DNA of 63,136 bases, filler included, from Octopus bimaculoides (Eukaryota), in NCBI RefSeq assembly GCF_001194135.2. It is 5 parts of 5 records of this genome, joined end to end, with 100 filler letters (N's around TTAATTAATTAA, not from the genome) between each part and the next. Parts side by side here need not be neighbours in the genome. Positions count along the whole stretch, not along the records: positions 1 to 23,298 come from NC_069007.1; 4 more parts are not named here. One strand, 5' to 3'. The notes under the pieces were generated by a model that saw nothing but the letters and a program-made list of their open reading frames with translations, was not told the DNA's origin and did not search any database. The first letter of the stretch is position 1, and each line of letters starts with the position of its first letter. This document shows, piece by piece, positions 3,567-23,298 of this stretch. The position numbers were made by a program, and so were the translations under genes.

Positions 3567-4510
3567 TTTCAATGTCACATTCGTTGAAAGCATGCGAAAT
3601 ANNNNNNNNNNNNNNNNNNNNNNNNNNNNNNNNNNNNNNNNNNNNNNNNNNNNNNNNNNNNNNNNNNNNNNNNNNNNNNNNNNNNNNNNNNNNNNNNNNN
3701 NNNNNNNNNNNNNNNNNNNNNNNNNNNNNNNNNNNNNNNNNNNNNNNNNNNNNNNNNNNNNNNNNNNNNNNNNNNNNNNNNNNNNNNNNNNNNNNNNNNN
3801 NNNNNNNNNNNNNNNNNNNNNNNNNNNNNNNNNNNNNNNNNNNNNNNNNNNNNNNNNNNNNNNNNNNNNNNNNNNNNNNNNNNNNNNNNNNNNNNNNNNN
3901 NNNNNNNNNNNNNNNNNNNNNNNNNNNNNNNNNNNNNNNNNNNNNNNNNNNNNNNNNNNNNNNNNNNNNNNNNNNNNNNNNNNNNNNNNNNNNNNNNNNN
4001 NNNNNNNNNNNNNNNNNNNNNNNNNNNNNNNNNNNNNNNNNNNNNNNNNNNNNNNNNNNNNNNNNNNNNNNNNNNNNNNNNNNNNNNNNNNNNNNNNNNN
4101 NNNNNNNNNNNNNNNNNNNNNNNNNNNNNNNNNNNNNNNNNNNNNNNNNNNNNNNNNNNNNNNNNNNNNNNNNNNNNNNNNNNNNNNNNNNNNNNNNNNN
4201 NNNNNNNNNNNNNNNNNNNNNNNNNNNNNNNNNNNNNNNNNNNNNNNNNNNNNNNNNNNNNNNNNNNNNNNNNNNNNNNNNNNNNNNNNNNNNNNNNNNN
4301 NNNNNNNNNNNNNNNNNNNNNNNNNNNNNNNNNNNNNNNNNNNNNNNNNNNNNNNNNNNNNNNNNNNNNNNNNNNNNNNNNNNNNNNNNNNNNNNNNNNN
4401 NNNNNNNNNNNNNNNNNNNNNNNNNNNNNNNNNNNNNNNNNNNNATATATATGTGTGTGTGTGTGTGTGTATGTGTGTGTGTGTGTGTGTGTATACATAC
4501 ATACACTTAT

Positions 4511-5407: not shown

Positions 5408-6340
5408 ATCTTACATTTATAATTTGCATAATCTTAACTTCTGCCATGACTATGCAAGTTATGTTGTAGCCGAATACTTCGTNNNNNNNNNNNNNNNNNN
5501 NNNNNNNNNNNNNNNNNNNNNNNNNNNNNNNNNNNNNNNNNNNNNNNNNNNNNNNNNNNNNNNNNNNNNNNNNNNNNNNNNNNNNNNNNNNNNNNNNNNN
5601 NNNNNNNNNNNNNNNNNNNNNNNNNNNNNNNNNNNNNNNNNNNNNNNNNNNNNNNNNNNNNNNNNNNNNNNNNNNNNNNNNNNNNNNNNNNNNNNNNNNN
5701 NNNNNNNNNNNNNNNNNNNNNNNNNNNNNNNNNNNNNNNNNNNNNNNNNNNNNNNNNNNNNNNNNNNNNNNNNNNNNNNNNNNNNNNNNNNNNNNNNNNN
5801 NNNNNNNNNNNNNNNNNNNNNNNNNNNNNNNNNNNNNNNNNNNNNNNNNNNNNNNNNNNNNNNNNNNNNNNNNNNNNNNNNNNNNNNNNNNNNNNNNNNN
5901 NNNNNNNNNNNNNNNNNNNNNNNNNNNNNNNNNNNNNNNNNNNNNNNNNNNNNNNNNNNNNNNNNNNNNNNNNNNNNNNNNNNNNNNNNNNNNNNNNNNN
6001 NNNNNNNNNNNNNNNNNNNNNNNNNNNNNNNNNNNNNNNNNNNNNNNNNNNNNNNNNNNNNNNNNNNNNNNNNNNNNNNNNNNNNNNNNNNNNNNNNNNN
6101 NNNNNNNNNNNNNNNNNNNNNNNNNNNNNNNNNNNNNNNNNNNNNNNNNNNNNNNNNNNNNNNNNNNNNNNNNNNNNNNNNNNNNNNNNNNNNNNNNNNN
6201 NNNNNNNNNNNNNNNNNNNNNNNNNNNNNNNNNNNNNNNNNNNNNNNNNNNNNNNNNNNNNNNNNNNNNNNNNNNNNNNNNNNNNNNNNNNNNNNNNNNN
6301 NNNNNNNNNNNNNNNNNNNNNNNNNNNNNNNNNNNNNNNN

Positions 6341-9650: not shown

Positions 9651-10103
9651 TTATTATCGAAGCTCTGATTTCAAATCCCTTCGATGTTGGTATTTTTATA
9701 GTTTTTGTAATCGTACCTGAGTGGAGGGGTGAGGTGGAAGGGAGGGGGGGGGGCTATTTACTTCTCATCTCTGAAGTGCTTTCATATTTAAATACAAAAC
9801 GGTGAGCTGGCAGAATCATCGGCTCTTTGAATTCTGATTTAAAATGCTGTCAAGGTAGACTTTGCCTTTTNNNNNNNNNNNNNNNNNNNNNNNNNNNNNN
9901 NNNNNNNNNNNNNNNNNNNNNNNNNNNNNNNNNNNNNNNNNNNNNNNNNNNNNNNNNNNNNNNNNNNNNNNNNNNNNNNNNNNNNNNNNNNNNNNNNNNN
10001 NNNNNNNNNNNNNNNNNNNNNNNNNNNNNNNNNNNNNNNNNNNNNNNNNNNNNNNNNNNNNNNNNNNNNNNNNNNNNNNNNNNNNNNNNNNNNNNNATTA
10101 ATT

Positions 10104-10324
10104 ACTCCTTTACTCTTTTACTTGTTTCAGCCATTCGACTGTGGCCATGCTGGAGCTCCGCCTTTAGTCGAACAAATCGACCCCAGGACTTATTCTTTGT
10201 AAGCCTAGTACTTATTCTATCGGTCTCTTTTGCCGAACCACTAAGTTACAGGGACGTAAACACACCACCATCGGTTGTCAAGCAATGTTGGGAAGTGAGG
10301 GACAACACAGACACACAAATACAT

Positions 10325-10355
<31 letters not shown>

Positions 10356-10492
10356 CATACATACGACGGGCTTCTTTCAGTTTCCGTCTACCAAATCCAC
10401 TCACAAGGCTTTGATCGGCCCGAGGCTATAGTAGAAGACACTTGTCCAAGTGCCACGCAGTGGGAATGAACCCAGAACCATGTGGTTGGTAA
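10104..10492 (-). mobile_element. SINE family A, near full length
   Basis: Reverse complement of the 42327/49510/53835 copies, including the internal (CA)/(TA) microsatellite. Confidence 0.9.
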
Positions 10493-10574
10493 AAGATGAT
10501 ATTTACATATAAAAAAATTAATTATATAAATATTTAAATATAAAAAAAATACTTCAATATTTGCTTCTGCATTG

Positions 10575-10929: not shown

Positions 10930-11270
10930 TATCTTTAAAATTAATCGAATCAAAAGCGTTCTAAATTAAAACTTTTCATCATAATTTTATGTTATTTCTT
11001 TACGCAAACACCAGCTTAATAATGATAGAATTATTTTACCAAATTCATTATTTTCAAAATTACTTGGAACAAATGTAGTGTTTATCTACAGAAATATGGT
11101 AACAAAAGGGTTAAAGTGATCTAAATTAAAACCTTCTTACAAAGTTTTGTGTTTATTTATGTTCCAAACACCAACTTAATAACAACAAAGTTGTTTTACT
11201 AAATTGTTGATTATTTTCAAAATATTTGAAACCAAGTAAATTTCAACAGAATTATGGTAACGAAACGGTC
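10930..11270. repeat. ~160-bp diverged tandem duplication
   Basis: CTAAATTAAAAC at 10961 and 11121; CAAACACCA(G/A)CTTAATAA and ATGGTAAC repeated with the same period. Confidence 0.75.
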
Positions 11271-12190
11271 AATCAGCTGTTTTGAATAAACTGTCCACAT
11301 ACTGGTCTTTGACAACAGAATGACAATCAGAAATTCTCAGTCTTGTTTGTGGTTCCACTATTTTTGTTTTGTTTTGTTTTGTCTGTTTGTGGTTGGTGTG
11401 TGAAGGCACTTGTCTGTTGTGGCTGCGGTGGTGCAACCACAACCACAAGATCATGATTTCAATTCTCAGACCAGGTGGTTCATTGTGCTTTTGAGGAAAA
11501 CCCATGACGACTCCATTGATGCAGTCCTCAGACCTGTCAGGGTGTGTCAAATCTCCAAAGGCATGCCTGCACCACACAAGGACATCCAATGATGTTGTTG
11601 TTGATGATGATAATTACCAGAGTCTCGAGGCACCTACAAAAGCCGTGGGCACTAAAGCTTCTTGGTGGCTCCCCCATGATGCAGTCCTCAAAACCATCAG
11701 ATCCTTATAAGCTATCCAACCCATGCTAGCATGAAACAAGAACATTAAATAAATGATGATGATGATGATGAATCCTACTGATTCAGTATCCCTACAAGGG
11801 CGATGTGTACTGCCATTGCCACTCCCAAACCTAACAAAAAAAAAACCCTAGTAAAACTAAATATTTTTTTTCAAATATGATGTGTATCTATTAACAAATA
11901 TGCTGTACGGTGTTATCAACAATTAACATCCCTTACTTATTATCAAATTTCTAACTACTCAGGAAAACTAATATTGTAAAGCAGTGATTCCCAATCTTTT
12001 ACAATCACAACTTATTTGAGTGAATCATTAATCTTCTAAGACTTATTTTTTAAATTAACAAATCCCAGAAACGGTGCATTTTACGTTTTATACTTAATTT
12101 TTGAAAAATATTTCCTTCATTTTCGTTTGCAGTAAATGTTGTGTTTGTAACCTGTATGTCTATGGTTTTTATTTATTTTTTTATTTTTGT

Positions 12191-12554
12191 TTCCGTCATT
12201 GCACTTCAGCCATGCTGGAGCACCACCTTGAAAGGTTTAGTTAAATAAATCAAACCCCAGTACTTATTGAGTCGAGTATTTATTCTACCTCTTATTCATC
12301 CTCTTTTGTTGAGCTAAGTTACGAGGATATAAATAAACCAACACTGGTTGTCATGTGGTGAAAAAAGGACAAACACAAAGACCCACTACACACACAACAG
12401 GCTTCTTTCAGTTTCTGTCTACCAAACCCACTCACAAGGTTTTTGTTGGCTCAGGGCTATAGTAGAAGTCACTTACCCAAGGTGCCATGCAATGGGAGTG
12501 AACCTGGAACCATGTGGCTGGTTAGTAAATGTGTTACCACACACCTGTGCCTGC
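12191..12554 (-). mobile_element. SINE family A
   Basis: Reverse complement of the family A consensus seen in this window. Confidence 0.8.
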
Positions 12555-12559
12555 ACCTG

Positions 12560-12880
12560 TGCATCCTGGTGTTCTGTCAGTTATAAGGACGAGGGTTCCA
12601 GTTGATCCAATGAACGGAACAGCCTGCTCATGAAATTAACATGCAAGTGGCTGAGCACTCCACAGACACACGATCCCTTAACGTAGTTTTCGGGTAGATT
12701 CAGCATGACACAGAATGTGACACAGTGGGCCCTTGTGAATTACAGGTACAACCTATTTTTGCCAGCTGAGTGGACTGGAGCAATGTGAAATAAAGTGTCT
12801 TGCTCAAGGACACAACTTGGCACCAGGATTTGAACTCCTGCCCTTACAATTGTGAGCTGAATGCGATAACCACTAAACTA
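12560..12880 (-). mobile_element. SINE family B variant
   Basis: Homologous to 4511-4812. Confidence 0.8.
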
Positions 12881-12902
12881 TCAACCTATGTGTATAACAT
12901 AT

Positions 12903-13122
12903 TTAACCTTTTCACATTTAAACTGGCCAAAATAGTCTGACATTTTTCTGTTCAAACTGACTAGATCTAACCTTTCACACCTATCCTACAATGTCATTCT
13001 GAATCTAAACGATCCCATATTTGAAATCTCAAAACGACGAGGTAATCCACACTTAATTCAAAACAACGCGAATAAATAAGCATTACTTTTTGACATAGTA
13101 ATCTGAATGCAAAAGGATTTAA
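12903..13122. mobile_element. TTAA-flanked MITE (piggyBac/Kolobok-like ends)
   Basis: Ends TTAACCTTTTCACATT and AATGCAAAAGGATTTAA; homologous copies at 18573, 19784 and ~21300. Confidence 0.65.
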
Positions 13123-15003
13123 GCACACCTGATACTTGATTAAATAAGTTACATCGTCAGTGACAACATATAATGTGTGTGTGTGTGTGTGTGTGTAACA
13201 ATATCACAATACCAAATATAACCGCCTAACAATAAACAATGTAACAAGAGTCGATTATGGTGTTATAACCATTCATACAATAACAATCCAATACTCCAAC
13301 ACAGAATAAATTACGAAACTAACGCTCTCACAGTTCGATCTCAACTGTCGACTGGCTCATCATTTTATAAGACGCACCCAGCCCGCTGTCAGTTCACTCC
13401 ACAACAAAATATTTCTGAGACGATGTTAGGTGTGCCACAATGTAACCTGAATATCATTTTTTTTTCTCCCCTATACTTTTAGTTATATTTTTAGCTCAGG
13501 TGTGCCACCGAATTTTGAAAAGAATGTTAAGTGTGCCACAAGTGAAAAAAGGTAGCGGAGCACCGATATAGAGGATAATCACCAAATAGCAATCAAGACC
13601 AGTACACACACACACATCATCATCATCTTTGAATATCCACGTTTCATCTGTGCTTCTAATGAATGGGTCAAGATTACTAAATAACGGTCAAGGGGAGATA
13701 ATCTCAAGAATCCAGATTTCCTCAAAACTGATATGCCAGTGAGGAAAACGATAGGCTTATCGTCTGGAGACGAGAGGACAGTCATGGACATCTGCTTCTA
13801 TTTCTGTAGCTGTCATTGGTATAATAAGTGTCTGACTTCCAGAGAATGTATCGTAGTGTCTCTCTATCACGTACGTTTCGAAAAACGATGCAAAAGATAT
13901 AAGAAAATTTTTTTAAATCATCTTGATTAAAAATATAATTGAAATTAAACAATTAAAAAAATTAAAATTGAGAATAAAAATAAATATGAAATTTAAAATT
14001 TAATTTATGCTTTGTCATTTTCATCAGTGAGGAATCTTTTGAGGGACATCNNNNNNNNNNNNNNNNNNNNNNNNNNNNNNNNNNNNNNNNNNNNNNNNNN
14101 NNNNNNNNNNNNNNNNNNNNNNNNNNNNNNNNNNNNNNNNNNNNNNNNNNNNNNNNNNNNNNNNNNNNNNNNNNNNNNNNNNNNNNNNNNNNNNNNNNNN
14201 NNNNNNNNNNNNNNNNNNNNNNNNNNNNNNNNNNNNNNNNNNNNNNNNNNNNNNNNNNNNNNNNNNNNNNNNNNNNNNNNNNNNNNNNNNNNNNNNNNNN
14301 NNNNNNNNNNNNNNNNNNNNNNNNNNNNNNNNNNNNNNNNNNNNNNNNNNNNNNNNNNNNNNNNNNNNNNNNNNNNNNNNNNNNNNNNNNNNNNNNNNNN
14401 NNNNNNNNNNNNNNNNNNNNNNNNNNNNNNNNNNNNNNNNNNNNNNNNNNNNNNNNNNNNNNNNNNNNNNNNNNNNNNNNNNNNNNNNNNNNNNNNNNNN
14501 NNNNNNNNNNNNNNNNNNNNNNNNNNNNNNNNNNNNNNNNNNNNNNNNNNNNNNNNNNNNNNNNNNNNNNNNNNNNNNNNNNNNNNNNNNNNNNNNNNNN
14601 NNNNNNNNNNNNNNNNNNNNNNNNNNNNNNNNNNNNNNNNNNNNNNNNNNNNNNNNNNNNNNNNNNNNNNNNNNNNNNNNNNNNNNNNNNNNNNNNNNNN
14701 NNNNNNNNNNNNNNNNNNNNNNNNNNNNNNNNNNNNNNNNNNNNNNNNNNNNNNNNNNNNNNNNNNNNNNNNNNNNNNNNNNNNNNNNNNNNNNNNNNNN
14801 NNNNNNNNNNNNNNNNNNNNNNNNNNNNNNNNNNNNNNNNNNNNNNNNNNNNNNNNNNNNNNNNNNNNNNNNNNNNNNNNNNNNNNNNNNNNNNNNNNNN
14901 NNNNNNNNNNNNNNNNNNNNNNNNNNNNNNNNNNNNNNNNNNNNNNNNNNNNNNNNNNNNNNNNNNNNNNNNNNNNNNNNNNNNNNNNNNNNNNNNNNNN
15001 NNN

Positions 15004-15329
15004 AGCCTGCTCGTGAAATTAACGTGCAAGTGGCTGAGCACCCCACAGACACGTGTACCCTTAACGTAGTTCTCGGGGATATTCAGCGTGACACAGAGTG
15101 TGACAAGGCTGACCCTTTGAATTACAGGCACAACAGAAACACGAAGTAAATGTGAGAGAAGGTTGTGGTGGAAGAGTACAGCAGGGTTCACCACCATCCA
15201 CTGCCAGAGCCTCGTGGAGCTTTAGGTGTTTTCGCTCAATAAACACTCACAACGCCCGGTCTGGGAATCGAAACCGCGATCCTATGCCCGCGAGTCCGCT
15301 GCCTTAACCACTGGGCCATTGCGCCTCCA
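15004..15329 (-). mobile_element. SINE family B (tRNA-like head)
   Basis: Minus-strand head GGAGGCGCAATGGCCCAGTGGTTAAGG...GGTTTCGATTCCC with A/B-box-like motifs; body shared with the 39313 and 54912 copies. Confidence 0.9.
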
Positions 15330-16199
15330 CAACTGGTCGCATACCACAACGTTTATCGGAATCTACTGAAACAGTCAACACGTTTAAACTGTTGTAAAAT
15401 TTGGCTTTTTATTGTCAGGTTGGGTTAAAATTATAAACCGCGTTAACTCTGTCTTATGCTTCCCCATACCAGGTAGAAATATTACATAATTAAAACAGCA
15501 ACTTATAATCAGAGTTTCTCAAACGACATTACTATATATATTGCCAGTTATCTCCCCTTTGAAAGTACAGCTTCCTTTTCCGGTTTAACATCATTCGTGT
15601 GAGTACGCAGTCTTCTCGTTCCCTCAATATTTTCACAAAATCTCTTTTCATCTTGTTGCGAAAATATATCATTTAAACATATTTTGATTATATTTCTCTA
15701 ACTAAAATACCCAAATTTCATTTTACCATATTTTCATCCCTAAAACACTTAATAATAACCGATTTTTATCCACACTTTCTCTCCTGTTGCCACCGCATTG
15801 TGGATTTCTCAAATATTTCTTCTTCCATCGTCGATTATTCCGCCGTTTTTTTTTCACGTTTTAAACCTTTTTTTATTTATTTCCTATGCTTCGAATGAAA
15901 TAATTAAGATTTAAAATTCATATAAACCCTGAATCTTTATTAAAAGTGCCAGCAATCGAAGATAGATTCTTATTATATTCCTCCAGTCGCACATGTGAGC
16001 CACCAGCTTTGACATCGCACTTTATATATCTTTATATATATAGATATAGGGCGATCGCCAGATATAGATATGGCCAGGGTACATTTTACTATTAATAGCT
16101 TTGGGAACAAGTTGGATTTAATGTAGTTGAGTGTATATTGATCGATGAAGGTCCGAAGGTTATACACACACGTGTACATGAGATTTTCATTCTATATCC

Positions 16200-16350
16200 A
16201 TGTCAGCTAAAAGCAGGACCCAGTCTTCATTTTTAACGTTTTATCAATTTCTACATAAGGACATTGTATTATCCAATGTGTCTATTATCTTTAAAGACCG
16301 TTCAGTGTGATTTGATCAAAATTTGGCTGCCATTTCTAGCAGGGCACCTG
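16200..16350 (-). mobile_element. Old repeat family E fragment
   Basis: TTTGGCTGC(C/T)(A/G)TTTCTAGCAG core also at ~16670, ~21155 and (reverse) in 47360-47850. Confidence 0.6.
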
Positions 16351-16872
16351 TTCAAACCATTTTAAATCGCTTCGGTTCCCGATCTTTTAAACTCCATTGC
16401 ATTTAATAGATGTAGTTTATGGCCAGCATAGATTTTACTAGAAATGTTTAAGTGTTGCGAACAAGGTGATTGTATATGATGTATGTATATTATAAGGGTC
16501 TAATTTTTTTAACTGAAAAATATACACTCGTGAAGTTAAACAGCGAAACTTAAAACATACATGCTTAAGGTTCATTATTCTGTATCGATGTCATCCAAGA
16601 TCAGAAACCAATTTTCATTTAGATGTTTATTTCTTTCTTCAAAGACCGTTGAGTGTGATCTGATAAAGATTTGGCTGCTGTTTCTAGCAGGTCAGCTGAT
16701 AAGTTTTTGTTGTGAATATGTTGGGCTGAGGTCAGTGTATAATGATGTATATATGATGAAAAAAAAAGAAAAGAGGGGCTTAATTTTTCATTTATGTACA
16801 CACGTGTACGTGACAGCCAAATGGGTAAAATTCACATTCTTTATTCATGTTCCCTAAAACCAGAACCCGCGA

Positions 16873-16904
16873 TCCTTTTCCGCGTTTGTTTTCCTACTTA
16901 GGAG
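16873..16904 (+). promoter_or_regulatory. Candidate TCT initiator / 5'TOP start of RPL13 exon 1
   Basis: TCCTTTTC matches YYCTTTYY and is followed by CGCGTTTGTTTTCCTACTTAGGAG; it lies ~890 nt upstream of the RPL13 acceptor at 17761-17762. Confidence 0.45.
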
Positions 16905-17095
16905 CTTGGAATTTATCCAAAGTGCTTTTTTTCTGTAAAGACGTCTNNNNNNNNNNNNNNNNNNNNNNNNNNNNNNNNNNNNNNNNNNNNNNNNNNNNNN
17001 NNNNNNNNNNNNNNNNNNNNNNNNNNNNNNNNNNNNNNNNNNNNNNNNNNNNNNNNNNNNNNNNNNNNNNNNNNNNNNNNNNNNNNNNNNNNNNN

Positions 17096-17548
17096 GGTCC
17101 CGATGCGCGTATGCGCAAAATAATGTAAAAGTAAATAAAACAGTAAATAATTTTTTTTTTTTAATCTTCCCTATCTTACTCTTAAAACGTCGTTTTACGT
17201 CCTTCCAGGGTGTATTTTGGTGTCGCATCTATTTCAGTAATCCCATTGTAGGACGCACTCCAACAATCAGAACATATACTCGTCCCTGGTTTGATAAATT
17301 CTTTAATAAATGGTAGAAGAGTTTCAGAAGAACAGTCAGGTACAAAGACTATAAACCTATTTTTATCCCCCTCTATCCCATCCTCCATTGTATTTGCACA
17401 TCATAAGATTCATCTATTTCTACGATCTGCCCAAGTCCACCAAATTGGTAGGGGTTACGCAAAAGATAATTACTTGTAATGTCCCTCATGAACTGATACT
17501 AGGATCGACTAGTCACGACTAGCTAGCGCGAGTGCGCGCACCGGAACC
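17096..17548 (-). mobile_element. Merlin (ISXO2/IS1595-like) DNA transposon, internally deleted
   Basis: Minus-strand fragments QFGGLGQIVEIDES and TLLPFIKEFIKPGTSICSDCW match Merlin/ISXO2 DDE motifs. The 16-bp TIRs GGTCCCGATGCGCGTA (17096-17111) and TGCGCGCACCGGAACC (17533-17548) differ at 3 positions. Confidence 0.8.
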
Positions 17549-17770
17549 ACAAAGCCAGCAATTTCGGAGGATGGTGTAAGTCAATTTCATCGACCCCACC
17601 CCCCATCCTCGAGTGTTACTCTGTCTACCCTGAAAGGCAAAGTCGTCTGTCTTTGTGCTGTGGTTGGCTGCCTTTCAGGGTCAGTTAAAATAGGTACCGG
17701 TTGATGCAATTGACTTGACCCTTTTGGCCCCAAATTTAAAGCCATTTTTATTATTGTTTCAGTTATCACT

Positions 17771-18016
17771 ATGGCACGTCTTGGAAACCAAACGGTGCCA
17801 AATGGCCATTTTCACAAGGACTGGCAGCGCTATGTCCGAACCTGGTTTGACCAGCCAATGCGCAAAAAACGCCGAGCAAGGAAGAGGATGATAAAAGCGA
17901 GGAAAGTAGCTCCCAGACCAGCCGCTGGCCCCCTTCGGCCAATCGTTACATGTCCTTCCATCAAATACAACATGCGTGTCCGTGCTGGACGTGGTTTCAC
18001 TATTGAAGAGTTGAGG
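17771..18016 (+). CDS. RPL13: 60S ribosomal protein L13 (eL13), coding exon 1 (codons 1-82)
   Basis: [29 protein letters not shown]...[12 protein letters not shown] is unmistakable eL13; acceptor AG at 17761-62; donor GTAAGT at 18017. Confidence 0.98.
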
Positions 18017-18187
18017 GTAAGTCAGTTTGAAGTTGATTTCTTTTTTTCTTAAAGATCTGTGATTCTCCTCCGAATTACCCCAGCATTACAATACTTCTCA
18101 TTGGTGTTGGTTCTCTCTCTCTCTCTCTCCTCCACATACGTAATCCTAGTTTTGTTGTTTTTTTTTTTTATTTCTCTGTGTTTGTAG

Positions 18188-18361
18188 AAAGCTGGCATCA
18201 GCAAGAGGGAAGCCCCAACAATTGGAATTGCTGTTGATTACAGAAGACGCAGCATGTCTGCTGAGGAGCTCCAAGCTAACGCCCAGAGACTGAAGGAATA
18301 TAAATCCAGATTGATTCTGTTCCCCAGGAAGATGAGCAAACCTGGCAAGAAAGATTCTTCG
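18188..18361 (+). CDS. RPL13: RPL13 coding exon 2 (58 codons)
   Basis: TTTGTAG|[58 protein letters not shown]|GTGAAT; phase 0 at both ends. Confidence 0.97.
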
Positions 18362-18572
18362 GTGAATATGGCTTTGGTTCTTTCTTTCTTTTCATTATAG
18401 AATCTGTGTGGTGTAGCTTAAGTTTGCTGGTGTAATATACCTAATGGGCATTTTGTTCAGACTCTGGTCAAGCACAGCCTAAACATTGAACTACAGTATA
18501 AGCTATCTGTGTTAATATGGCCTTTGTTCGTCCATCATAGCTGGGGTTTCACTTAATGACATCCCTGTTCGC

Positions 18573-18755
18573 TTAATCCTCTAGCAATATCCGACCCAAT
18601 TTGACCTCTCACATTTACTTCGCAATGTCATGCTAAAAATATACACAATCGCATCATAATGTTGAAGCCCCCTGAGATAATGCATGATTAATTCAGAACG
18701 ATGGGAATAGATAAGAATTACATTTGACAGAGGAAGCTGAATGCTAAAGGATTAA
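18573..18755. mobile_element. TTAA-flanked MITE in RPL13 intron
   Basis: TTAATCCTCTAGCAAT ... AATGCTAAAGGATTAA; homologous to 12903-13122. Confidence 0.65.
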
Positions 18756-18769
18756 AGTATAGCTAAATA

Positions 18770-18870
18770 TGTTGTTGACTGATCCAGTGATGATAATTCA
18801 TGTACCACTCTGACCTTCCAAGATGGACAAACAAACACCCATTTATCTGAGGATTTTGGTCAGCACAGCT
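18770..18870 (+). ncRNA. Box C/D snoRNA-like unit, copy 1
   Basis: Box C GTGATGA 18787-93, D' CTGA 18810-13, D CTGA 18847-50; terminal stem ATCC/GGAT plus extended TGTTGTTGAC/GTCAGCACA. Confidence 0.85.
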
Positions 18871-19099
18871 ATTTAATTGCATCCACCATCATCATCATTT
18901 AATATCCACTTTTACATGGTTCGGATAGCATTTGTTGAGGTAGATATTTCTCTGGCTGGAAGGATGCCCTTCCTGTCACAGGCCTTCATCTGTTTCTTGG
19001 TAAGGTCATATTTAAAAGCAATGTAAATAAATAAGCAATTACATTTGACAGAATAATTTGAACTAGACATGAGTGTGTGCGTGTGTGTGTATGTATATA

Positions 19100-19270
19100 T
19101 ATATCATCGTTTAACATTCTTTTCCATGCTGGCATGGGTTGGACGGTTTGACTGTGGTCTGGAGAGCCAGTGGCTGCACCAGGTTCCAATCTGATCTGGC
19201 AGTGTTTCTACAGCTGGATGGTGATGTTTTACGTACTGCCGGCACAGGAGCCAGTCAGGCGGACCTGGCA
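19100..19270 (-). mobile_element. SINE family D ((GAT)n-tailed) fragment
   Basis: CATCGTTTAAC...TTTCCATGCTGGCATGGGTTGGACGG...CCAGG(T/C)TCCAATCT shared with 23022, 48855 and 55465. Confidence 0.75.
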
Positions 19271-19658
19271 TGTATATGTGTGTGTGAGTGTATATAGATA
19301 TATGTATACACACACACACACACACATCTATAGTGACAAGTTTAGCTCATTAGGATGTACATCAGTCCTGAATATTCCTTGTTTTTGTGTTCAAGCTGGT
19401 CAGATCCTCTTTCCCCACAATGTCATTCTCAATATAATCACATCATCAAAATGTCTAAGCTATGAGATGATGCAAGATTAATTCATCATACCAAACTTTT
19501 TTTTTTTTTTGTAAATGGGCCACTCCTTATGCGGTGGTCCCCACTGCTGAAAAATTTCCATGTGATTTTTCGTTAGACATGCCATTCAGAAAATCTTGCA
19601 GGCCATAGGTTGCTTATGTCTGGTTTGAAATATATGTGTATCCACATATTGATAACGT

Positions 19659-19758
19659 GTTGTTGACTGATCCAGTGATGATAAATCATGTACCCCTCTG
19701 ACTTTCCCAGATGGACAAACAAACACCCATTTATCTGAGGATTTTGGCCAGCACAGCT
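19659..19758 (+). ncRNA. Box C/D snoRNA-like unit, copy 2
   Basis: Box C 19675-81, D' 19698-701, D 19735-38; same terminal stem. Confidence 0.85.
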
Positions 19759-19783
19759 TTTTTTGATACTTCCAAATGATCCC

Positions 19784-19948
19784 TTGACCCTTTAGCACTC
19801 GGGTGTCTCTGTCGAATGTAATGCTTATTTATTCCCATTGTTTTGAATTAACAATGTATGAGCTTATAGCTTGAAGATTTCAATGATGTGTTTGTATATT
19901 CTTAGAATGACATTGTAGGGTAGGTGTGAGAGGTCAGGTATGGTCAGT
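19784..19948. mobile_element. TTAA-type MITE, inverted relative to the 18573 copy
   Basis: Reverse complement of 18573-18755 (TTGACCCTTTAGCA...AGAATGACATTGTAGGGTAGGTGTGAGAGG). Confidence 0.65.
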
Positions 19949-19949
19949 G

Positions 19950-20286
19950 GTCATTTGACTGCGGCCATGCTGGGGCACTGCCTTGAAAGGTTTTAGTCGA
20001 TCAAATTTACTCGGGGACTTATTTTTGTTAAGCTTGGTACTTATCCTATCAGTTTATTTTGCCGAACCACTAAATTACAGGGACGTAAACACAAGACACC
20101 TGCACACAAATGTGTGTATACACACTCACACAGGGCAGGCTTATTCCTGTTTGTCTACCAAATCGACTCAATGCTTTTTTGTTGGCCTGAGAGTAAGACA
20201 GTAACCCAAGGTGTCGCGCAGTGGGACTGAACCTGGGACCATGTGTTTGGGAAGCAAACTTGTTACCACACAGCCACATTTGCGCC
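19950..20286 (-). mobile_element. SINE family A between snoRNA copies 2 and 3
   Basis: Reverse complement of the family A consensus. Confidence 0.8.
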
Positions 20287-20322
20287 AAAAGCACACACAC
20301 ACACACACACGATATGGTAACA

Positions 20323-20422
20323 TGTTGTTGACTGATCCAGTGATGATAATTCATGTACCACTCTGACCTTCCAAGATGGACAAACAAACACCCATTTATC
20401 TGAGGATTTTGGTCATCACAGT
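20323..20422 (+). ncRNA. Box C/D snoRNA-like unit, copy 3
   Basis: Box C 20340-46, D' 20363-66, D 20400-03; C-to-D sequence identical to copy 1. Confidence 0.85.
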
Positions 20423-20536
20423 TATTTTACCCCAGGGTGGTTAAAAGCAATCTCTATTGTAATACGAGGTGGATTTATTGTTGTATGATGTGATATACAG
20501 TCTCGGTGTGTTTGGGGAGGGATTTCTGGTGTTATG

Positions 20537-20643
20537 TTGTGCTGTTTCTTGATCCTATGATGATAAATCATGTACCCCTCTGACCTTCCAAGATGGACAA
20601 ACAAACACCCATTATTTATCTGAGGATATTGGTCAGCACAGCT
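20537..20643 (+). ncRNA. Box C/D snoRNA-like unit, copy 4
   Basis: Box C ATGATGA 20557-63, D' 20580-83, D 20620-23; 3-nt ATT insertion in the D guide; external stem TGTGCTG/CAGCACA. Confidence 0.85.
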
Positions 20644-20911
20644 GCTCTGAGGTGGGGCTAAATCTCTTGCTCAAGATGAGTGGTCTACTAATCTCTTTCT
20701 GTGCAGACTTTGGTCTCTGAAGCAATCGGTCATCAATGGTTTGGGGTGGGATTTGTACGTTCATGGTTTGGGGGTGGGAAAAAGGGGCACTTGCCTCTTG
20801 TGCATCTGGGGACTGTCAGGCTGATGTTATTACTTGTTTCAGTCATTGGGCAGTGGCCATGCTGGGGTATGTTGAAAATGGTATTTCATTGGTTGTTTTG
20901 GTTTGGTTTCA

Positions 20912-21003
20912 TTGACTGATCCTATGATGATAAATCATGTACCCCTCTGATCTTCCGAGATGGACAAACAAACACCCATTATTTATCTGAGGATATTGGT
21001 CAT
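20912..21003 (+). ncRNA. Box C/D snoRNA-like unit, copy 5
   Basis: Box C ATGATGA 20924-30, D' 20947-50, D 20987-90; same ATT insertion as copy 4. Confidence 0.85.
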
Positions 21004-21294
21004 CATAGCAACTTTAGATGAGGGTGGGTAATCTTTCTGATTAAGGTTTGGGTTAACCTTGAGCAAACAAGCATTTCATCACCCGGCCCAGCTGTGATCA
21101 TTTATTTCTATACCTAAGACTGTGTGCAATGTTTCATCTCCATGGGAAAGTGTGGTTTGGTTGCTGTTTCTAGCAGATTGAGCAATTAGATCATTCACGA
21201 ATGGCCAGTGGCTTGCGGGACTTTCTGGGTGTCATGCTGAATGGAAAATTATAAGTGTCACCTTGGGACCTAATCCTTATTTAGCTTGCTTTGC

Positions 21295-21477
21295 CAAATC
21301 TAATATTTATTCACATGGTTTGGGGATTTCGATGATGTATAAGGTGGTGCTGGAAAAGTTCCTGGCTTTGACAAAAGAAAATACAGGAGAATCAAGTAAC
21401 AGTGATATTGTAGGATAGATGTAAGGGCTGGTTAACATTTTGGCAGGACATGGCCAGTTTAAATGCTAAGGGGTTAA
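21295..21477. mobile_element. TTAA-type MITE with a nested mariner-TIR-like fragment (~21339-21395)
   Basis: Ends AAATGCTAAGGGGTTAA; the internal TATAAGGTGGTGCTGGAAAAGTTCCTGGCTTT resembles a mariner TIR. Confidence 0.5.
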
Positions 21478-21604
21478 AAGTTAACTCGTTTTTTTAATCC
21501 TATCCCAATAATGACACACACACCGGTTAAGTATCATTTCTTTCTTATTAGTCAACTAACCAATTAATCGTTTTTCTAATTTCTCTCTCTTGTTTCATCT
21601 GCAG

Positions 21605-21820
21605 TCTGAAGAGATCAAGTTGGCCACCCAATTGAAGGGCAAACTGATGCCAATTGTGAACAAGGTGAGGAAGGACAAACCACAGGTGCTCACCAAAGAC
21701 ATGAGGAGATTCAAGGCTCACCACACAATCAAGATTGCCCGCATTGACAAACGTATGTTTGGCCGAAGACAGAAGATAGCCGAGAGATTGGCAGCTGAAG
21801 AGGAATCTAAGAAGAAATAG
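21605..21820 (+). CDS. RPL13: RPL13 coding exon 3 (71 codons + stop); spliced protein 211 aa
   Basis: CTGCAG|SEEIKLATQLKGKLMPI...RIDKRMFGRRQKIAERLAAEEESKKK*; 246+174+216=636 nt. Confidence 0.97.
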   Translation, partial: SEEIKLATQLKGKLMPIVNKVRKDKPQVLTKDMRRFKAHHTIKIARIDKRMFGRRQKIAERLAAEEESKKK

Positions 21821-21834
21821 ACTGGCTTTGTATG

Positions 21835-21840
21835 AATAAA
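21835..21840 (+). terminator. RPL13 polyadenylation signal AATAAA
   Basis: 15 nt after the stop codon and followed by U/GU-rich sequence. Confidence 0.85.
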
Positions 21841-22132
21841 TGTTTCAGTGAATTGATTGTCTTGTCATTTTCTATACAGGTGTGTGTTTGTGTATTTGGG
21901 AGAATGATTCAGCAGGTGTTTCAAATACAGATTCACATGAAATCTTGATTGAAGGGTTTTACTTGGAAAGTGTTAGCATAAAACCAATGGGGCAATTTCA
22001 GGCAGGTTGGTATCAAAAGGGTTCACAAGGCATTGGGAAAAGAGGCTCAGTGGATTAAAGAAGGGATACGTGTATAAAGGAAATGGCATGGGTTGAGATC
22101 ATTGTGGAATGGCAGAGAATTAAAATAGACTG

Positions 22133-22375
22133 TTGGTGGTCATGCTGGAGCAGCATCTTGAAGGGGTTTGGGTCAAAGAAATCGACTCCAGGACATATGT
22201 AGTTTCTTTAAAGTCTGCTACTTATTCTATCGATCTCTTTTGCCAAACGGCTACACTATGGGGATGTAAACAATCCAACATACTTGTGCAAGTGTCTTCT
22301 ACTATAGCCTCCGGCTGACCAAACACCGAAATTGAAAGAAGCCCGTCGTGTATGTATATATGTATGTGTGTGTGT
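22133..22375. mobile_element. Rearranged SINE family A fragments (minus then plus)
   Basis: 3' body in reverse, followed by TGCAAGTGTCTTCTACTATAGCC...GAAAGAAGCCCGTCG forward. Confidence 0.6.
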
Positions 22376-22441
22376 ATACTGAGAGAGCTAGATCTCGTGT
22401 TCGACGACCTGCTAACATTGATATATCCATTTATAACAGAG

Positions 22442-23027
22442 GATGAACTGCAGCTGTAATCTAAAGCAGTACAAGTATCTATATGATACCGGAATACTCA
22501 ACTACTTGCATTATAACAATGAATGAGTTGATGTTACAGTTTCCATATATAAATCAAACGGGTTTTCGCTGGAGCTAGTGAACAGGGGAGACAACTCTTT
22601 ACATCAATTACCTTTCTTTAANNNNNNNNNNNNNNNNNNNNNNNNNNNNNNNNNNNNNNNNNNNNNNNNNNNNNNNNNNNNNNNNNNNTATTGTGGTTGG
22701 GAAGCAAACTTCTCACCGCACAGCCACACTCGTTTCTGACTGGATCGGGCAAGATGCGATTATAATGCATTATTTAAATGGAATTATATTTTCGAGAAGA
22801 GAATGATTGCCGGTTTCCGAGGTGGGGGGGGGAAGATTTAAAGGGAGGTAATTGATGTAAGAGTTGTCTCCCCTGTTCACTAGCTTCAATAGGTTCAGCT
22901 AAAATCCGTTTGATTTATATATGGAAACTGTAACATCAACTCATTCATTGTGTTATAATGCAAGTGGTTGAGTATTCCGGTATCTTACAGATACTTGTAT
23001 TACTTTAGATTACAGCTGCAGTTCATC
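22442..23027. mobile_element. Foldback/MITE with ~175-bp inverted arms (22442-22613 and 22846-23027)
   Basis: GATGAACTGCAGCTGTAATCTAAAG... and ...CTTTAGATTACAGCTGCAGTTCATC; arms roughly 90% identical by eye. Confidence 0.85.
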
Positions 23028-23298
23028 ATCATCGTTTAACGTCCGCTTTCCATGCTAGCATGGGTTGGACGATTTGACTGAGAACTGGTGAAACCGGATG
23101 GCAACACCAGGCTCCAATCTAATTTGGCAGAGTTTCTACAGCTGGATGCCCTTCCTAACGCCAACCACTCAGTGTAGTGGGTGCTTTTACGTGTCACCCG
23201 CATGAAAACGGCCACGCTCGAAATGGTGTCTTTTATGTGCCACCCGCACAAGCCAGTCCAGGGTCACTGGCAACGGCCACGCTCAAAATGGTGCATCT
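23022..23298 (-). mobile_element. SINE family D
   Basis: CATCATCGTTTAACGTCCGCTTTCCATGCTAGCATGGGTTGG...CTGGATGCCCTTCCTAACGCCAACC. Confidence 0.85.

What the first reader, a model, noticed from the sequence alone, without database searches (positions are those of the whole stretch)
18770..21003. Five-copy box C/D snoRNA array inside a single RPL13 intron
Seen: five ~100-nt units (18770, 19659, 20323, 20537, 20912), all on the host strand. Each reads stem-RTGATGA-guide-CTGA-spacer-guide-CTGA-stem, with 64-67 nt from box C to box D, a 3-nt bulge before the GA pairs and a closing ATCC/GGAT stem (canonical kink-turn geometry). Boxes and core are almost invariant while flanks diverge and are filled with SINEs and MITEs, which implies selection on the unit. 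Established: ribosomal-protein introns host snoRNAs, but in animals the usual rule is one snoRNA per intron, with C/D snoRNAs typically ~70 nt upstream of the 3' splice site. Polycistronic clusters are mainly a plant and yeast feature. Inference: this could be a metazoan intronic polycistronic snoRNA cluster, needing endonucleolytic release or hidden non-coding exons. I do not recognise the snoRNA family.
Basis: partly seen in the sequence, partly recalled or inferred. Interest (0 to 1): 0.82.

Follow-up and report, generated by a model that had tools for sequence, protein, structure and literature searches.

The report
Octopus RPL13 intron snoRNA array
The last intron of the Octopus bimaculoides ribosomal protein L13 gene carries five copies of one rRNA-methylation guide RNA (an octopus relative of yeast snR40 and plant SnoR21); the arrangement is uncommon for an animal but is a variation on known biology.

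Summary
Five 73-76 nt box C/D units lie on the host strand in one 3,243-nt intron (18362-21604) of Octopus bimaculoides RPL13 (eL13). All five have intact C, D', C' and D boxes and an ATCC/GGAT end stem.

The family can be named. The best Rfam match is plant Z221/R21b. The 5' guide matches those of fly Me18S-Gm1358, plant SnoR21 and yeast snR40, which direct the 18S Gm site (yeast G1271).

The array is not an assembly artefact. O. sinensis and O. vulgaris carry collinear orthologues (5 and 6 intron copies, plus one upstream of the ATG exon). RPL13 loci of a chiton, a gastropod and a bivalve have none.

Across 18 copies the boxes never vary and the guides vary little, while the D'-C' spacer and flanks vary freely. 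That indicates selection on several copies. Some paralogues also share species-specific changes, which indicates gene conversion.

Three O. bimaculoides copies carry an A-to-C change that breaks the 18S pairing.

How the inner copies are released is untested. Only one unit has a conserved splice-acceptor-like site at the usual distance. All units have long flanking stems.

Verdict: a real, lineage-specific intronic snoRNA cluster, of moderate interest.

The parts
17771..18016 (+). RPL13 (eL13) first coding exon, aa 1-82. It is preceded by a 3' splice site at 17762, so a 5'UTR exon lies further upstream.
   Evidence: tblastn with human RPL13, splice junctions read, protein 100% identical to O. 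bimaculoides RPL13.
18188..18361 (+). RPL13 second coding exon, aa 83-140. The 5' splice site is TCG|gtgaat.
18362..21604 (+). Last RPL13 intron, 3,243 nt with no assembly gap. It hosts all five snoRNA units.
18782..18854 (+). Unit u1, 73 nt. Box C is 18787-18793, the D' guide is 18794-18809 (TAATTCATGTACCACT, intact), box D' is 18810-18813, box C' is 18821-18827, the D guide is 18828-18846 (short form) and box D is 18847-18850. The conserved precursor with flanking stem spans 18764-18872.
   Evidence: for boxes. RF00300 scores 37.1 bits. Model R1 scores 140.6 bits. The mature sequence is identical to u3.
19670..19742 (+). Unit u2, 73 nt. Boxes are intact. The D' guide carries A-to-C (ACCCCT) three nt from box D'. 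The D guide is the short form. About 200 nt downstream are shared with the upstream copy u0 of O. sinensis and O. vulgaris.
   Evidence: (33.3 bits).
20335..20407 (+). Unit u3, 73 nt. Both guides match u1.
   Evidence: (37.1 bits).
20552..20627 (+). Unit u4, 76 nt. Box C is ATGATGA. The D' guide is ACCCCT. The D guide is the long form with an ATT insertion (CACCCATTATTTAT), which its orthologues in O. sinensis and O. vulgaris also have.
   Evidence: (41.6 bits).
20686..20706 (+). Branch-point-like tactaat, pyrimidine tract and cag, with the AG 79 nt after the end of u4. A strong acceptor-like site lies at +79 in all three Octopus species. It is a candidate cryptic or alternative 3' splice site.
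   Evidence: In O. sinensis and O. vulgaris a CTG|GTGAGT donor follows at +155. That stretch is deleted in O. bimaculoides.
20919..20994 (+). Unit u5, 76 nt. It differs from u4 at only 2 positions, including the ATT insertion and ACCCCT that its own orthologues lack. This indicates gene conversion from u4.
   Evidence: (44.0 bits, equal to the gathering score).
19942..20280 (+). SINE-like interspersed repeat between u2 and u3. Related copies lie at about 10122-10511 and 12187-12543.
   Evidence: Repeat families D7, D10, D12 and D19.
21605..21820 (+). RPL13 last coding exon, aa 141-211 plus the stop codon. An AATAAA signal follows at about 21836.

Best explanation
What it is (shown). The region is a lineage-specific array of paralogous box C/D methylation-guide snoRNA genes of the snR40 / Z221-R21b (SnoR21) / Me18S-Gm1358 type. 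The copies arose by local duplication inside the RPL13 gene of Octopus. They are kept similar by purifying selection on boxes and guides, plus gene conversion between copies.

What it does (inferred from guide rules). With fibrillarin snoRNPs, the 5' (D') guide CAUGUACCACU directs 2'-O-methylation of the 18S G in GGUGG*UGCAUGG. That G corresponds to yeast G1271, Arabidopsis G1275 and fly G1358. The 3' (D) guide ACCCAUUUAU probably directs methylation of an A in a 28S AAA*UGGGU sequence, most likely at the site homologous to yeast 25S U898. In O. bimaculoides only u1 and u3 keep an intact 18S guide.

How it is made (inferred, not shown). The copies are co-transcribed within the RPL13 pre-mRNA. 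None sits at the usual distance from the exon-3 acceptor, and the inner copies cannot be reached by exonucleases working in from the intron ends. I therefore favour snoRNP assembly that does not depend on splicing position. The 13-22 kcal/mol stem formed by the sequences flanking every unit would help that assembly. Endonucleolytic cuts between units and exonucleolytic trimming to the snoRNP borders would follow, as for plant and yeast polycistronic clusters and Xenopus U16/U18.
For: Anatomy. All five units have canonical boxes, spacing and an end stem.

Family.
- RF00300 is the best Rfam match for all five, at 33-44 bits and E 1e-4 to 1e-7.
- The printed alignments show the same D' guide in fly Me18S-Gm1358 (CAUGCACCACU|CUGA), plant Z221/R21b and yeast snR40.
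- The D guide shares an ACCCA core with snR40, at the same distance from box D.
- Arabidopsis SnoR21 is assigned to 18S G1275 in a RiboMeth-seq table (PMC8053127).

Target. In 129 kb of eukaryotic rDNA contigs, the only conserved rRNA site giving a pairing run that starts next to box D' is the 12-bp match (9 Watson-Crick, 3 G-U) at GGTGGTGCATGG in 18S. The A-to-C variant has no match there.

Selection across 18 copies.
- Pairwise difference is 0 in boxes D and D', 0.016 in C' and 0.07-0.08 in the guides.
- It is 0.245 in the D'-C' spacer and 0.62-0.66 in the far flanks.
- Variable columns are 6 of 7 in the spacer against 8 of 56 in boxes plus guides (Fisher p = 2.7e-4).

Age and reality. Collinear orthologous copies occur in O. 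sinensis and O. vulgaris. RPL13 loci of a chiton, Pomacea and Mya have none.

Gene conversion. In O. bimaculoides u1 equals u3, and u4 differs from u5 at 2 positions. Their positional orthologues differ at 2-10 positions.

Flanking stems. Duplex energy is -13 to -22 kcal/mol and lies below the shuffle mean in all 18 units (z from -1.2 to -3.6). In several lineages the pairing extends into flanks that are not homologous between paralogues.

Against one exon per unit. Only u4 has a conserved acceptor-like site 40-100 nt downstream.
Against: - No expression or processing data were available, so maturation of any copy is unproven.
- The flanking stems have no covariation support. Shuffles reach the observed values, and RNAalifold finds no compensatory pair.
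The D guide fits two LSU sites about equally: 9 bp at CUUUAAAUGGGUAAG, and 8 or more bp at the snR40-homologous site. Arabidopsis SnoR21 has no 25S target listed.
- Three of the five O. bimaculoides copies have a mismatch two nt from the predicted 18S methylation site.
- u4 and u5 have a 3-nt longer D guide with no identifiable target.
- Orthologue identity of the units (88-97%) is barely above the intron background (86%). Cross-species conservation alone therefore proves little.
- Rfam at gathering thresholds reports nothing.
Confidence: 0.55

Rival explanations
1. Hidden-exon model. The annotated intron is really a string of short introns separated by non-coding or poison exons. Each snoRNA is then released from its own lariat by the ordinary splicing-dependent pathway, as in UHG/GAS5-type hosts or the SNORD116 array. 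The RPL13 mRNA comes from skipping all of those exons.
For: - Downstream of u4 there is a near-consensus branch site (tactaat), a pyrimidine tract and cag. The AG lies exactly 79 nt after the snoRNA end. An acceptor-like site is found at +79 in all three species.
- In O. sinensis and O. vulgaris a CTG|GTGAGT donor follows 75 nt later. The resulting 75-nt exon would carry an in-frame TGA, as read from the alignment.
- u3, u4 and u5 share a related downstream motif, AGGGTGG..TAATCT.
Against: - Only 1 unit in 5 or 6 per species has a strong acceptor-like site 40-100 nt downstream in all three species. An extra one after u2 occurs in O. bimaculoides only.
- The O. bimaculoides intron has no strong donor-like site at all by the same scan, and the O. 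sinensis donor region is deleted there.
- The acceptor-like site after u1 in O. bimaculoides is not conserved.
- The scan is a crude consensus filter. It also missed one real donor, at 18362.
Confidence: 0.2
2. Partial-output model. Exonucleolytic trimming of the single debranched intron yields mainly snoRNA-ended long RNAs (sno-lncRNAs) bounded by u1 and u5, and/or only some copies mature. The guide-mutated copies u2, u4 and u5 are decaying pseudogenes carried along by gene conversion.
For: - Two snoRNAs in one intron give sno-lncRNAs in mammals (PMC11028025).
- Three O. bimaculoides copies have lost 18S complementarity.
- O. vulgaris u2 has a mutated D guide, TT to CG.
- Species-specific variants shared between paralogues show that conversion can spread mutations.
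Against: - Boxes C, D' and D are invariant and C' nearly so in all 18 copies, while the internal spacer varies. This is not expected if most copies were free of constraint.
- Copy order and number are retained in three species.
Confidence: 0.2
3. Artefact or mobile-element model. The copies are an assembly duplication, or a snoRNA-derived retroposon or other transposable element scattered through the genome.
For: - The surrounding intron is full of interspersed repeats.
- The homologous segment is short, about 130 nt, for most paralogue pairs.
Against: - Each copy has unique flanks and diagnostic substitutions.
- Three independent assemblies show the same collinear order.
- Copies occur only in RPL13, only on the host strand, in the 84.8 kb held from the three Octopus loci.
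- No poly(A) tail is visible at the unit ends.
- Some paralogues share 180-300 nt of flank, which is typical of segmental duplication.
Confidence: 0.03

Closest known systems
Yeast snR40 (Rfam RF01201)
   Same: It is a dual-guide C/D snoRNA. The 5' guide ...UGCACCAGU|CUGA targets the same 18S G (G1271). The 3' guide has an ACCCA core at the same distance from box D as in the octopus units.
   Different: It scores only 19 bits against a gathering score of 50. The yeast gene is an independent single-copy transcription unit (my own knowledge). The yeast 3' guide reads ACCCAAAUUU, the octopus one ACCCAUUUAU.
Plant Z221/R21b, also called SnoR21 (Rfam RF00300)
   Same: It is the best Rfam match for all five units, at 33-44 bits. 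The D' guide core CAUG.ACCACU is the same. The 3' guide consensus ACCCAUUaUuuAUCUGA equals the long form found in u4 and u5. Arabidopsis SnoR21 guides 18S G1275 (PMC8053127).
   Different: Plant copies sit in polycistronic clusters; for example SnoR21.1 belongs to the HID1 cluster. The short-form octopus units lack 3 nt of the plant 3' guide. Only u5 reaches the gathering score, and only in a small-region search.
Drosophila Me18S-Gm1358 (RF00533)
   Same: The 5' guide and box arrangement are nearly identical: UGAUGAUAUUUCCAUGCACCACUCUGA.
   Different: It scores 21 bits against a gathering score of 50. The rest of the RNA is unrelated.
Human SNORD32A in RPL13A (my own knowledge, not tested here)
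   Same: It guides the homologous 18S G (G1328) and lives in a ribosomal-protein gene intron.
   Different: The host is a different gene (RPL13A, uL13, not RPL13, eL13). There is one snoRNA per intron. The 18S guide sits at the 3' (D) end. Its other guide targets 28S A1511, the site of fly Me28S-Am982.
Intronic snoRNA clusters of Drosophila and rice
   Same: Several snoRNAs lie within one host intron on the host strand (PMC3089462; PMC11028025).
   Different: The Drosophila clusters are described as H/ACA clusters. The rice clusters are in a plant. Here the cluster is five to six paralogues of one C/D snoRNA in a protein-coding ribosomal-protein gene of a mollusc.
DmSnR60 copies in the Drosophila mfl gene; SNORD115/116 arrays
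   Same: They are multiple tandemly duplicated copies of one C/D snoRNA in one host (PMC1821038).
   Different: Those follow the rule of one snoRNA per intron, with an exon between copies. Here the annotated mRNA splices across all five copies.
Mammalian sno-lncRNAs
   Same: They arise when two snoRNAs share one intron (PMC11028025).
   Different: Nothing here shows that such RNAs are made.

Membership tests
Box C/D snoRNA (class) | Box C (RUGAUGA) near the 5' end and box D (CUGA) near the 3' end, brought together by a short terminal stem (kink-turn). | tested here: met
   All five units read ATCC-N-RTGATGA ... CTGA-GGAT. Three nt lie between the stem and the GA of box C. The 18 Octopus copies keep 94% of the terminal-stem cells paired.
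Box C/D snoRNA (class) | Internal D' and C' boxes. | tested here: met
   D' is CTGA, invariant in all 18 copies. C' is AGATGGA, a degenerate form, and is TGATGGA in O. vulgaris u4.
Box C/D snoRNA (class) | A guide of about 10 or more bp complementary to rRNA ending next to box D or D', with the target nucleotide opposite position 5. | tested here: inconclusive
   Met for the D' guide of u1 and u3: 12 bp, 9 of them Watson-Crick, to GGTGGTGCATGG of 18S in surrogate eukaryotic rDNA. Not met for u2, u4 and u5, whose ACCCCT variant has no match. The short D guide pairs over only 8-10 bp at two candidate LSU sites. The long D guide has no match. Octopus rRNA itself was not available.
Box C/D snoRNA (class) | A stable 60-100 nt RNA bound by fibrillarin, Nop56, Nop58 and Snu13. 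| not testable with these tools
   No expression data are available.
Rfam RF00300 snoZ221_snoR21b | Bit score at or above the curated gathering score of 44. | tested here: inconclusive
   u5 scores 44.0, u4 41.6, u1 and u3 37.1 and u2 33.3 in a 2.8-kb search. Nothing is reported at gathering thresholds on the whole window or on the O. sinensis and O. vulgaris loci.
Rfam RF01201 snR40 and RF00533 Me18S-Gm1358 | Bit score at or above the gathering score of 50. | tested here: not met
   The scores are 19.3 and 21.1 bits. The resemblance is limited to the guides and boxes, so this is a functional analogue or distant homologue, not a member by score.
Intronic snoRNA cluster | Two or more snoRNA genes on the host strand between the same pair of spliced exons. 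| tested here: met
   Five units lie between exons ending at 18361 and starting at 21605. Those exons join to give the exact annotated protein. The same holds in O. sinensis (5 units) and O. vulgaris (6 units).
Polycistronic snoRNA cluster processed by endonuclease (plant/yeast type) | Release of individual snoRNAs from a common precursor by endonucleolytic cleavage, independent of splicing. | not testable with these tools
   Only indirect evidence exists: flank-flank duplexes of -13 to -22 kcal/mol at every unit, without covariation.
snoRNA retroposon (snoRT) or other transposable element | Poly(A) tail, target-site duplications and dispersed copies in both orientations. | tested here: not met
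   There is no A-tail at the unit ends. All copies are on one strand inside one gene across the 84.8 kb held from the three Octopus loci. Genome-wide dispersal could not be tested.

The most novel reading that the evidence does not exclude
Octopus releases five to six C/D snoRNAs from a single intron of a protein-coding gene through a splicing-independent, endonuclease-dependent polycistronic pathway. That pathway is otherwise typical of plants and yeast. Alternatively, the intron gives snoRNA-ended long non-coding RNAs. In either case the copies may have divided their tasks. u1 and u3 keep the 18S guide. The u4 lineage keeps a 3-nt longer 3' guide that is conserved in three Octopus species, is identical to the plant Z221/R21b consensus, and has an unknown target.
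Probability: 0.2. Interest if true: 0.6.

Novelty: new member of a known kind. Interest (0 to 1): 0.4.

Why it matters
- It adds an unannotated snoRNA to the cephalopod catalogue. Rfam thresholds miss it. It identifies the likely guide for a universally conserved 18S methylation site.
- It gives a clean natural test case for how an animal cell releases several C/D snoRNAs from one intron. It could also show whether cephalopods produce sno-lncRNAs.
- It offers a small, tractable example of concerted evolution and guide decay among tandem snoRNA paralogues.
- It does not change the general picture of snoRNA biology.

Tried and rejected
- Rfam at gathering thresholds on the window and on the two other Octopus loci gave no hit. 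Only E-value mode on short stretches exposed the family.
- The fly Me28S-Am982 family, in the same Rfam clan as snR40, was considered for the 3' guide. Its guide pairs with the CGAAAGAUGGUGAA site, so it is unrelated.
- A scan of metagenome contigs for the unit found nothing.
- RPL13 loci of Liolophura, Pomacea and Mya hold no relative of the unit. They also show no Rfam hit at E <= 0.01.
- No squid, cuttlefish or Nautilus genomic locus could be reached. The only other cephalopod-like RPL13 (P0003, 79% identical) sits on a 927-nt contig.
- Covariation tests of two alternative flanking helices were negative, as was RNAalifold.
- Cross-species conservation has no power to reveal hidden exons. 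The intron background is already 86% identical, and many 40-nt windows outside the units are at least 39/40 identical.
- The plant literature gave only the 18S target for SnoR21, so it does not settle the 3' guide.
- Huang et al. 2005 on Drosophila intronic clusters is not held in the library.
- The long 3' guide can pair with AUGGGUGGUGG of 18S only through five G-U pairs. I treat this as chance.
Full report
**Observation.** The sequence at 18600-21200 contains five units with the same architecture. Exact coordinates were computed.
- The units span 18782-18854 (u1), 19670-19742 (u2), 20335-20407 (u3), 20552-20627 (u4) and 20919-20994 (u5).
- Each reads ATCC, one nt, RTGATGA (box C), a 16-nt guide, CTGA (D'), a 7-nt spacer, AGATGGA (C'), a 19- or 22-nt guide, CTGA (D), GGAT.
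- The repeat finder groups them as one five-copy family (D4).
- A covariance model built from them (R1) scores 124-141 bits. With filters off it finds no further copy on either strand of the 23.3-kb piece.

**Host gene.** tblastn with human RPL13 and RPL13A shows the gene is RPL13 (eL13), not RPL13A.
- The junctions read give coding exons 17771-18016, 18188-18361 and 21605-21820.
- These splice into a 211-aa protein that is 100% identical to the database record for O. bimaculoides RPL13 (P0001).
- All five units lie in the intron between the last two coding exons (18362-21604, 3,243 nt). That intron contains no run of N.
- The first unit starts 420 nt after the donor. The last ends 610 nt before the acceptor. 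No unit is therefore at the usual position relative to exon 3.

**Which snoRNA it is.** At gathering thresholds Rfam reports nothing.
- In E-value mode, all five units have plant Z221/R21b (RF00300) as their best match. Scores are 33.3-44.0 bits against a gathering score of 44, with E from 1e-4 to 1e-7.
- Weaker hits go to fly Me18S-Gm1358 and yeast snR40.
- The printed alignments explain these hits. The 5' guide of the octopus units (UUCAUGUACCACU|CUGA) is the guide of Me18S-Gm1358 (CCAUGCACCACU|CUGA), Z221/R21b (UCAUGCACCACU|CUGA) and snR40 (UGUGCACCAGU|CUGA).
- Arabidopsis SnoR21 is assigned to 18S G1275 in a RiboMeth-seq table, next to U1273 (PMC8053127).

**The 18S target.** I had no octopus rRNA, so I fetched 55 eukaryotic rDNA contigs from metagenomes as surrogates.
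- In these 129 kb, the only conserved rRNA site giving a pairing run that starts next to box D' is GGTGGTGCATGG of 18S. It forms 12 pairs, 9 of them Watson-Crick.
- By the fifth-nucleotide rule, the methylated base is the second G of GUGG. From my own knowledge of the yeast map (U1269 and G1271), this is the G1271 site.

**The 3' guide.** The 3' guide (ACACCCAUUUAU|CUGA) shares with snR40 (AUACCCAAAUUU|CUGA) an ACCCA core at the same distance from box D.
- From my own reconstruction of yeast 25S, snR40 pairs with GAAUUUGGGUAUAGGGG and methylates U898.
- Many eukaryotes read AAAUGGGUAUAGGGG at that site. That would give the octopus guide 8 or more pairs there and an A as the target.
- A second LSU sequence, CUUUAAAUGGGUAAG, gives 9 Watson-Crick pairs.
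- The two sites cannot be told apart without the octopus 28S sequence. Arabidopsis SnoR21 has no 25S target listed.

**Guide variants.** u1 and u3 carry the canonical 5' guide.
- u2, u4 and u5 read ACCCCU instead of ACCACU. This puts a C-U mismatch two nt from the target G. The variant has no match in the surrogate rDNA.
- u4 and u5 carry an ATT insertion in the 3' guide. It moves the CCC core three nt away from box D, and no rRNA match was found for it.
- This long form is identical to the plant consensus ACCCAUUaUuuAUCUGA.

**Other species.** I fetched the RPL13 loci of O. sinensis (L001) and O. vulgaris (L002) and searched them with R1. Exons were mapped.
- O. sinensis has five copies in the homologous intron (11364-17946). 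It has one more copy about 470-575 nt upstream of the ATG exon.
- O. vulgaris has six copies in the intron (11226-23114) plus the same upstream copy.
- blastn shows the introns are collinear. Each O. bimaculoides unit has a positional orthologue in the same order. The extra O. vulgaris copy is a recent duplicate of u1.
- The long 3' guide is present in the u4 orthologues of all three species. All copies in the other two species have the canonical ACCACU.
- The array therefore predates the split of these species and is not an assembly artefact.
- RPL13 loci of a chiton, Pomacea and Mya contain no relative of the unit. They also show no Rfam hit at E <= 0.01. Hosting in RPL13 is thus lineage-specific.

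**Selection and concerted evolution.** These figures come from the 18 aligned copies (A4).
- Average pairwise difference is 0 in boxes D' and D, 0.016 in C' and 0.07-0.08 in the guides.
- It is 0.245 in the D'-C' spacer, about 0.2 in the adjacent flanks and 0.62-0.66 further out.
- Six of seven spacer columns vary, against 8 of 56 columns in boxes and guides (Fisher p = 2.7e-4).
- A variable spacer between invariant elements argues for purifying selection acting on several copies, not only for homogenisation.
- Homogenisation also occurs. In O. bimaculoides u1 and u3 are identical, and u4 and u5 differ at two positions. Each differs from its positional orthologues at 2-10 positions. u5 has acquired the ATT insertion that its orthologues lack.
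- Between O. bimaculoides and O. sinensis the units are 88-97% identical, the intron background 86% and the exons 93.5%. Cross-species conservation on its own is therefore weak evidence.

**Processing.** A review states that animals mostly follow one snoRNA per intron, and that two snoRNAs in one intron can give snoRNA-ended long RNAs (PMC11028025). Drosophila has numerous intronic clusters, described as H/ACA (PMC3089462). The four DmSnR60 copies in mfl keep one per intron (PMC1821038). I tested two ideas at the sequence level.

- **Flanking stems.** The sequences flanking each unit can pair, at -13 to -22 kcal/mol. All 18 lie below the shuffle mean (z from -1.2 to -3.6). In several lineages the pairing continues into flanks that are not homologous between paralogues. 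There is no covariation support for any fixed helix.
- **Hidden exons.** A consensus filter recovers all three real acceptors. It finds a strong acceptor-like site 40-100 nt downstream of only one unit in all three species, namely u4. That site has tactaat, a pyrimidine tract and cag, with the AG exactly 79 nt after the snoRNA end. In O. sinensis and O. vulgaris a CTG|GTGAGT donor follows 75 nt later, but that stretch is deleted in O. bimaculoides. The other units lack such sites.
- **Reading.** The model of one exon per copy is not supported by sequence. u4 may be the ancestral copy, placed upstream of an alternative or poison exon.
- **Preferred mechanism.** I favour splicing-independent assembly aided by the flanking stems, with endonucleolytic separation of the units. 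This is inference only.

**Comparison and verdict.**
- By guide and box architecture, this is the octopus counterpart of snR40, SnoR21 and Me18S-Gm1358. By Rfam score it is borderline for RF00300 and fails the other two families.
- By organisation, it is an intronic snoRNA cluster. That category is known, but it is uncommon for C/D snoRNAs in animal protein-coding genes.
- It is a new member of a known kind.
- The open and testable points are how the inner copies are released, whether the guide-mutated copies are expressed, and what the conserved long 3' guide targets.

Noticed in passing
window 20598-20619 (u4) and 20965-20986 (u5); L001 15172-15283; L002 19656-19767: A 3-nt ATT insertion in the 3' guide is conserved in the u4 lineage of all three Octopus species. 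It makes the guide identical to the plant Z221/R21b consensus (ACCCAUUAUUUAUCUGA). No rRNA target was found for it.
   Followed up: partly
window 19695, 20577, 20944 (the third base upstream of box D' in u2, u4 and u5): The same A-to-C change (ACCACT to ACCCCT) occurs in three non-orthologous copies of O. bimaculoides and in no copy of the other two species. It looks like a mutation spread by gene conversion, and it should disable the 18S guide.
   Followed up: partly
window 20686-20706; L001 about 15320-15425: A branch-site-like tactaat, a pyrimidine tract and cag sit exactly 79 nt after u4, with an acceptor-like site at +79 in all three species. In O. sinensis and O. vulgaris a GTGAGT donor follows 75 nt later. 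The 75-nt segment would carry an in-frame TGA, so it is a possible poison exon of RPL13.
   Followed up: partly
L001 9424-9532; L002 9310-9418; window gap 16947-17095: O. sinensis and O. vulgaris have a further copy (u0) about 470-575 nt upstream of the ATG exon. It shares about 200 nt of downstream flank with u2. In O. bimaculoides the corresponding region holds an assembly gap and 568 nt of non-homologous sequence, so the presence of u0 there is unknown.
   Followed up: partly
L002 16727-16835 and 20254-20362: O. vulgaris u2 has a mutated 3' guide (ATTTAT to ATCGAT, and CAAAC to CAATC). O. vulgaris also has an extra copy (u1b) that is a recent duplicate of u1 with about 80 nt of upstream flank.
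   Followed up: no
window 19421-19494, minus strand; related sequence at about 18640-18700: A C/D-like motif antisense to the host gives a weak hit to fly Me28S-Am982 (22.5 bits, gathering score 49). It has no CUGA box D. Similar sequence recurs at about 18640-18700, next to a repeat family (D15) with copies at 13054, 18689 and 19009. It is probably chance.
   Followed up: partly
window 19058-19130 and 19261-19343: TG/CA/TA microsatellites give spurious sub-threshold hits to mir-297, mir-466 and similar families on both strands (up to 47 bits against gathering scores of 85-90).
   Followed up: no
L002 1-9963 and 10001-23330: The O. vulgaris annotation splits the locus. The RPL13 model starts at Met40 (P0004, 172 aa). 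An upstream 80-aa gene model on the same strand ends inside the RPL13 ATG exon. This suggests a transcript that splices from more than 9.9 kb upstream into that exon, with u0 in its intron.
   Followed up: no
window 3602-4444, 5483-6340, 9871-10096, 14051-15003, 16947-17095, 22622-22688: There are six runs of N (assembly gaps) in the piece. None lies inside the snoRNA-bearing intron.
   Followed up: yes
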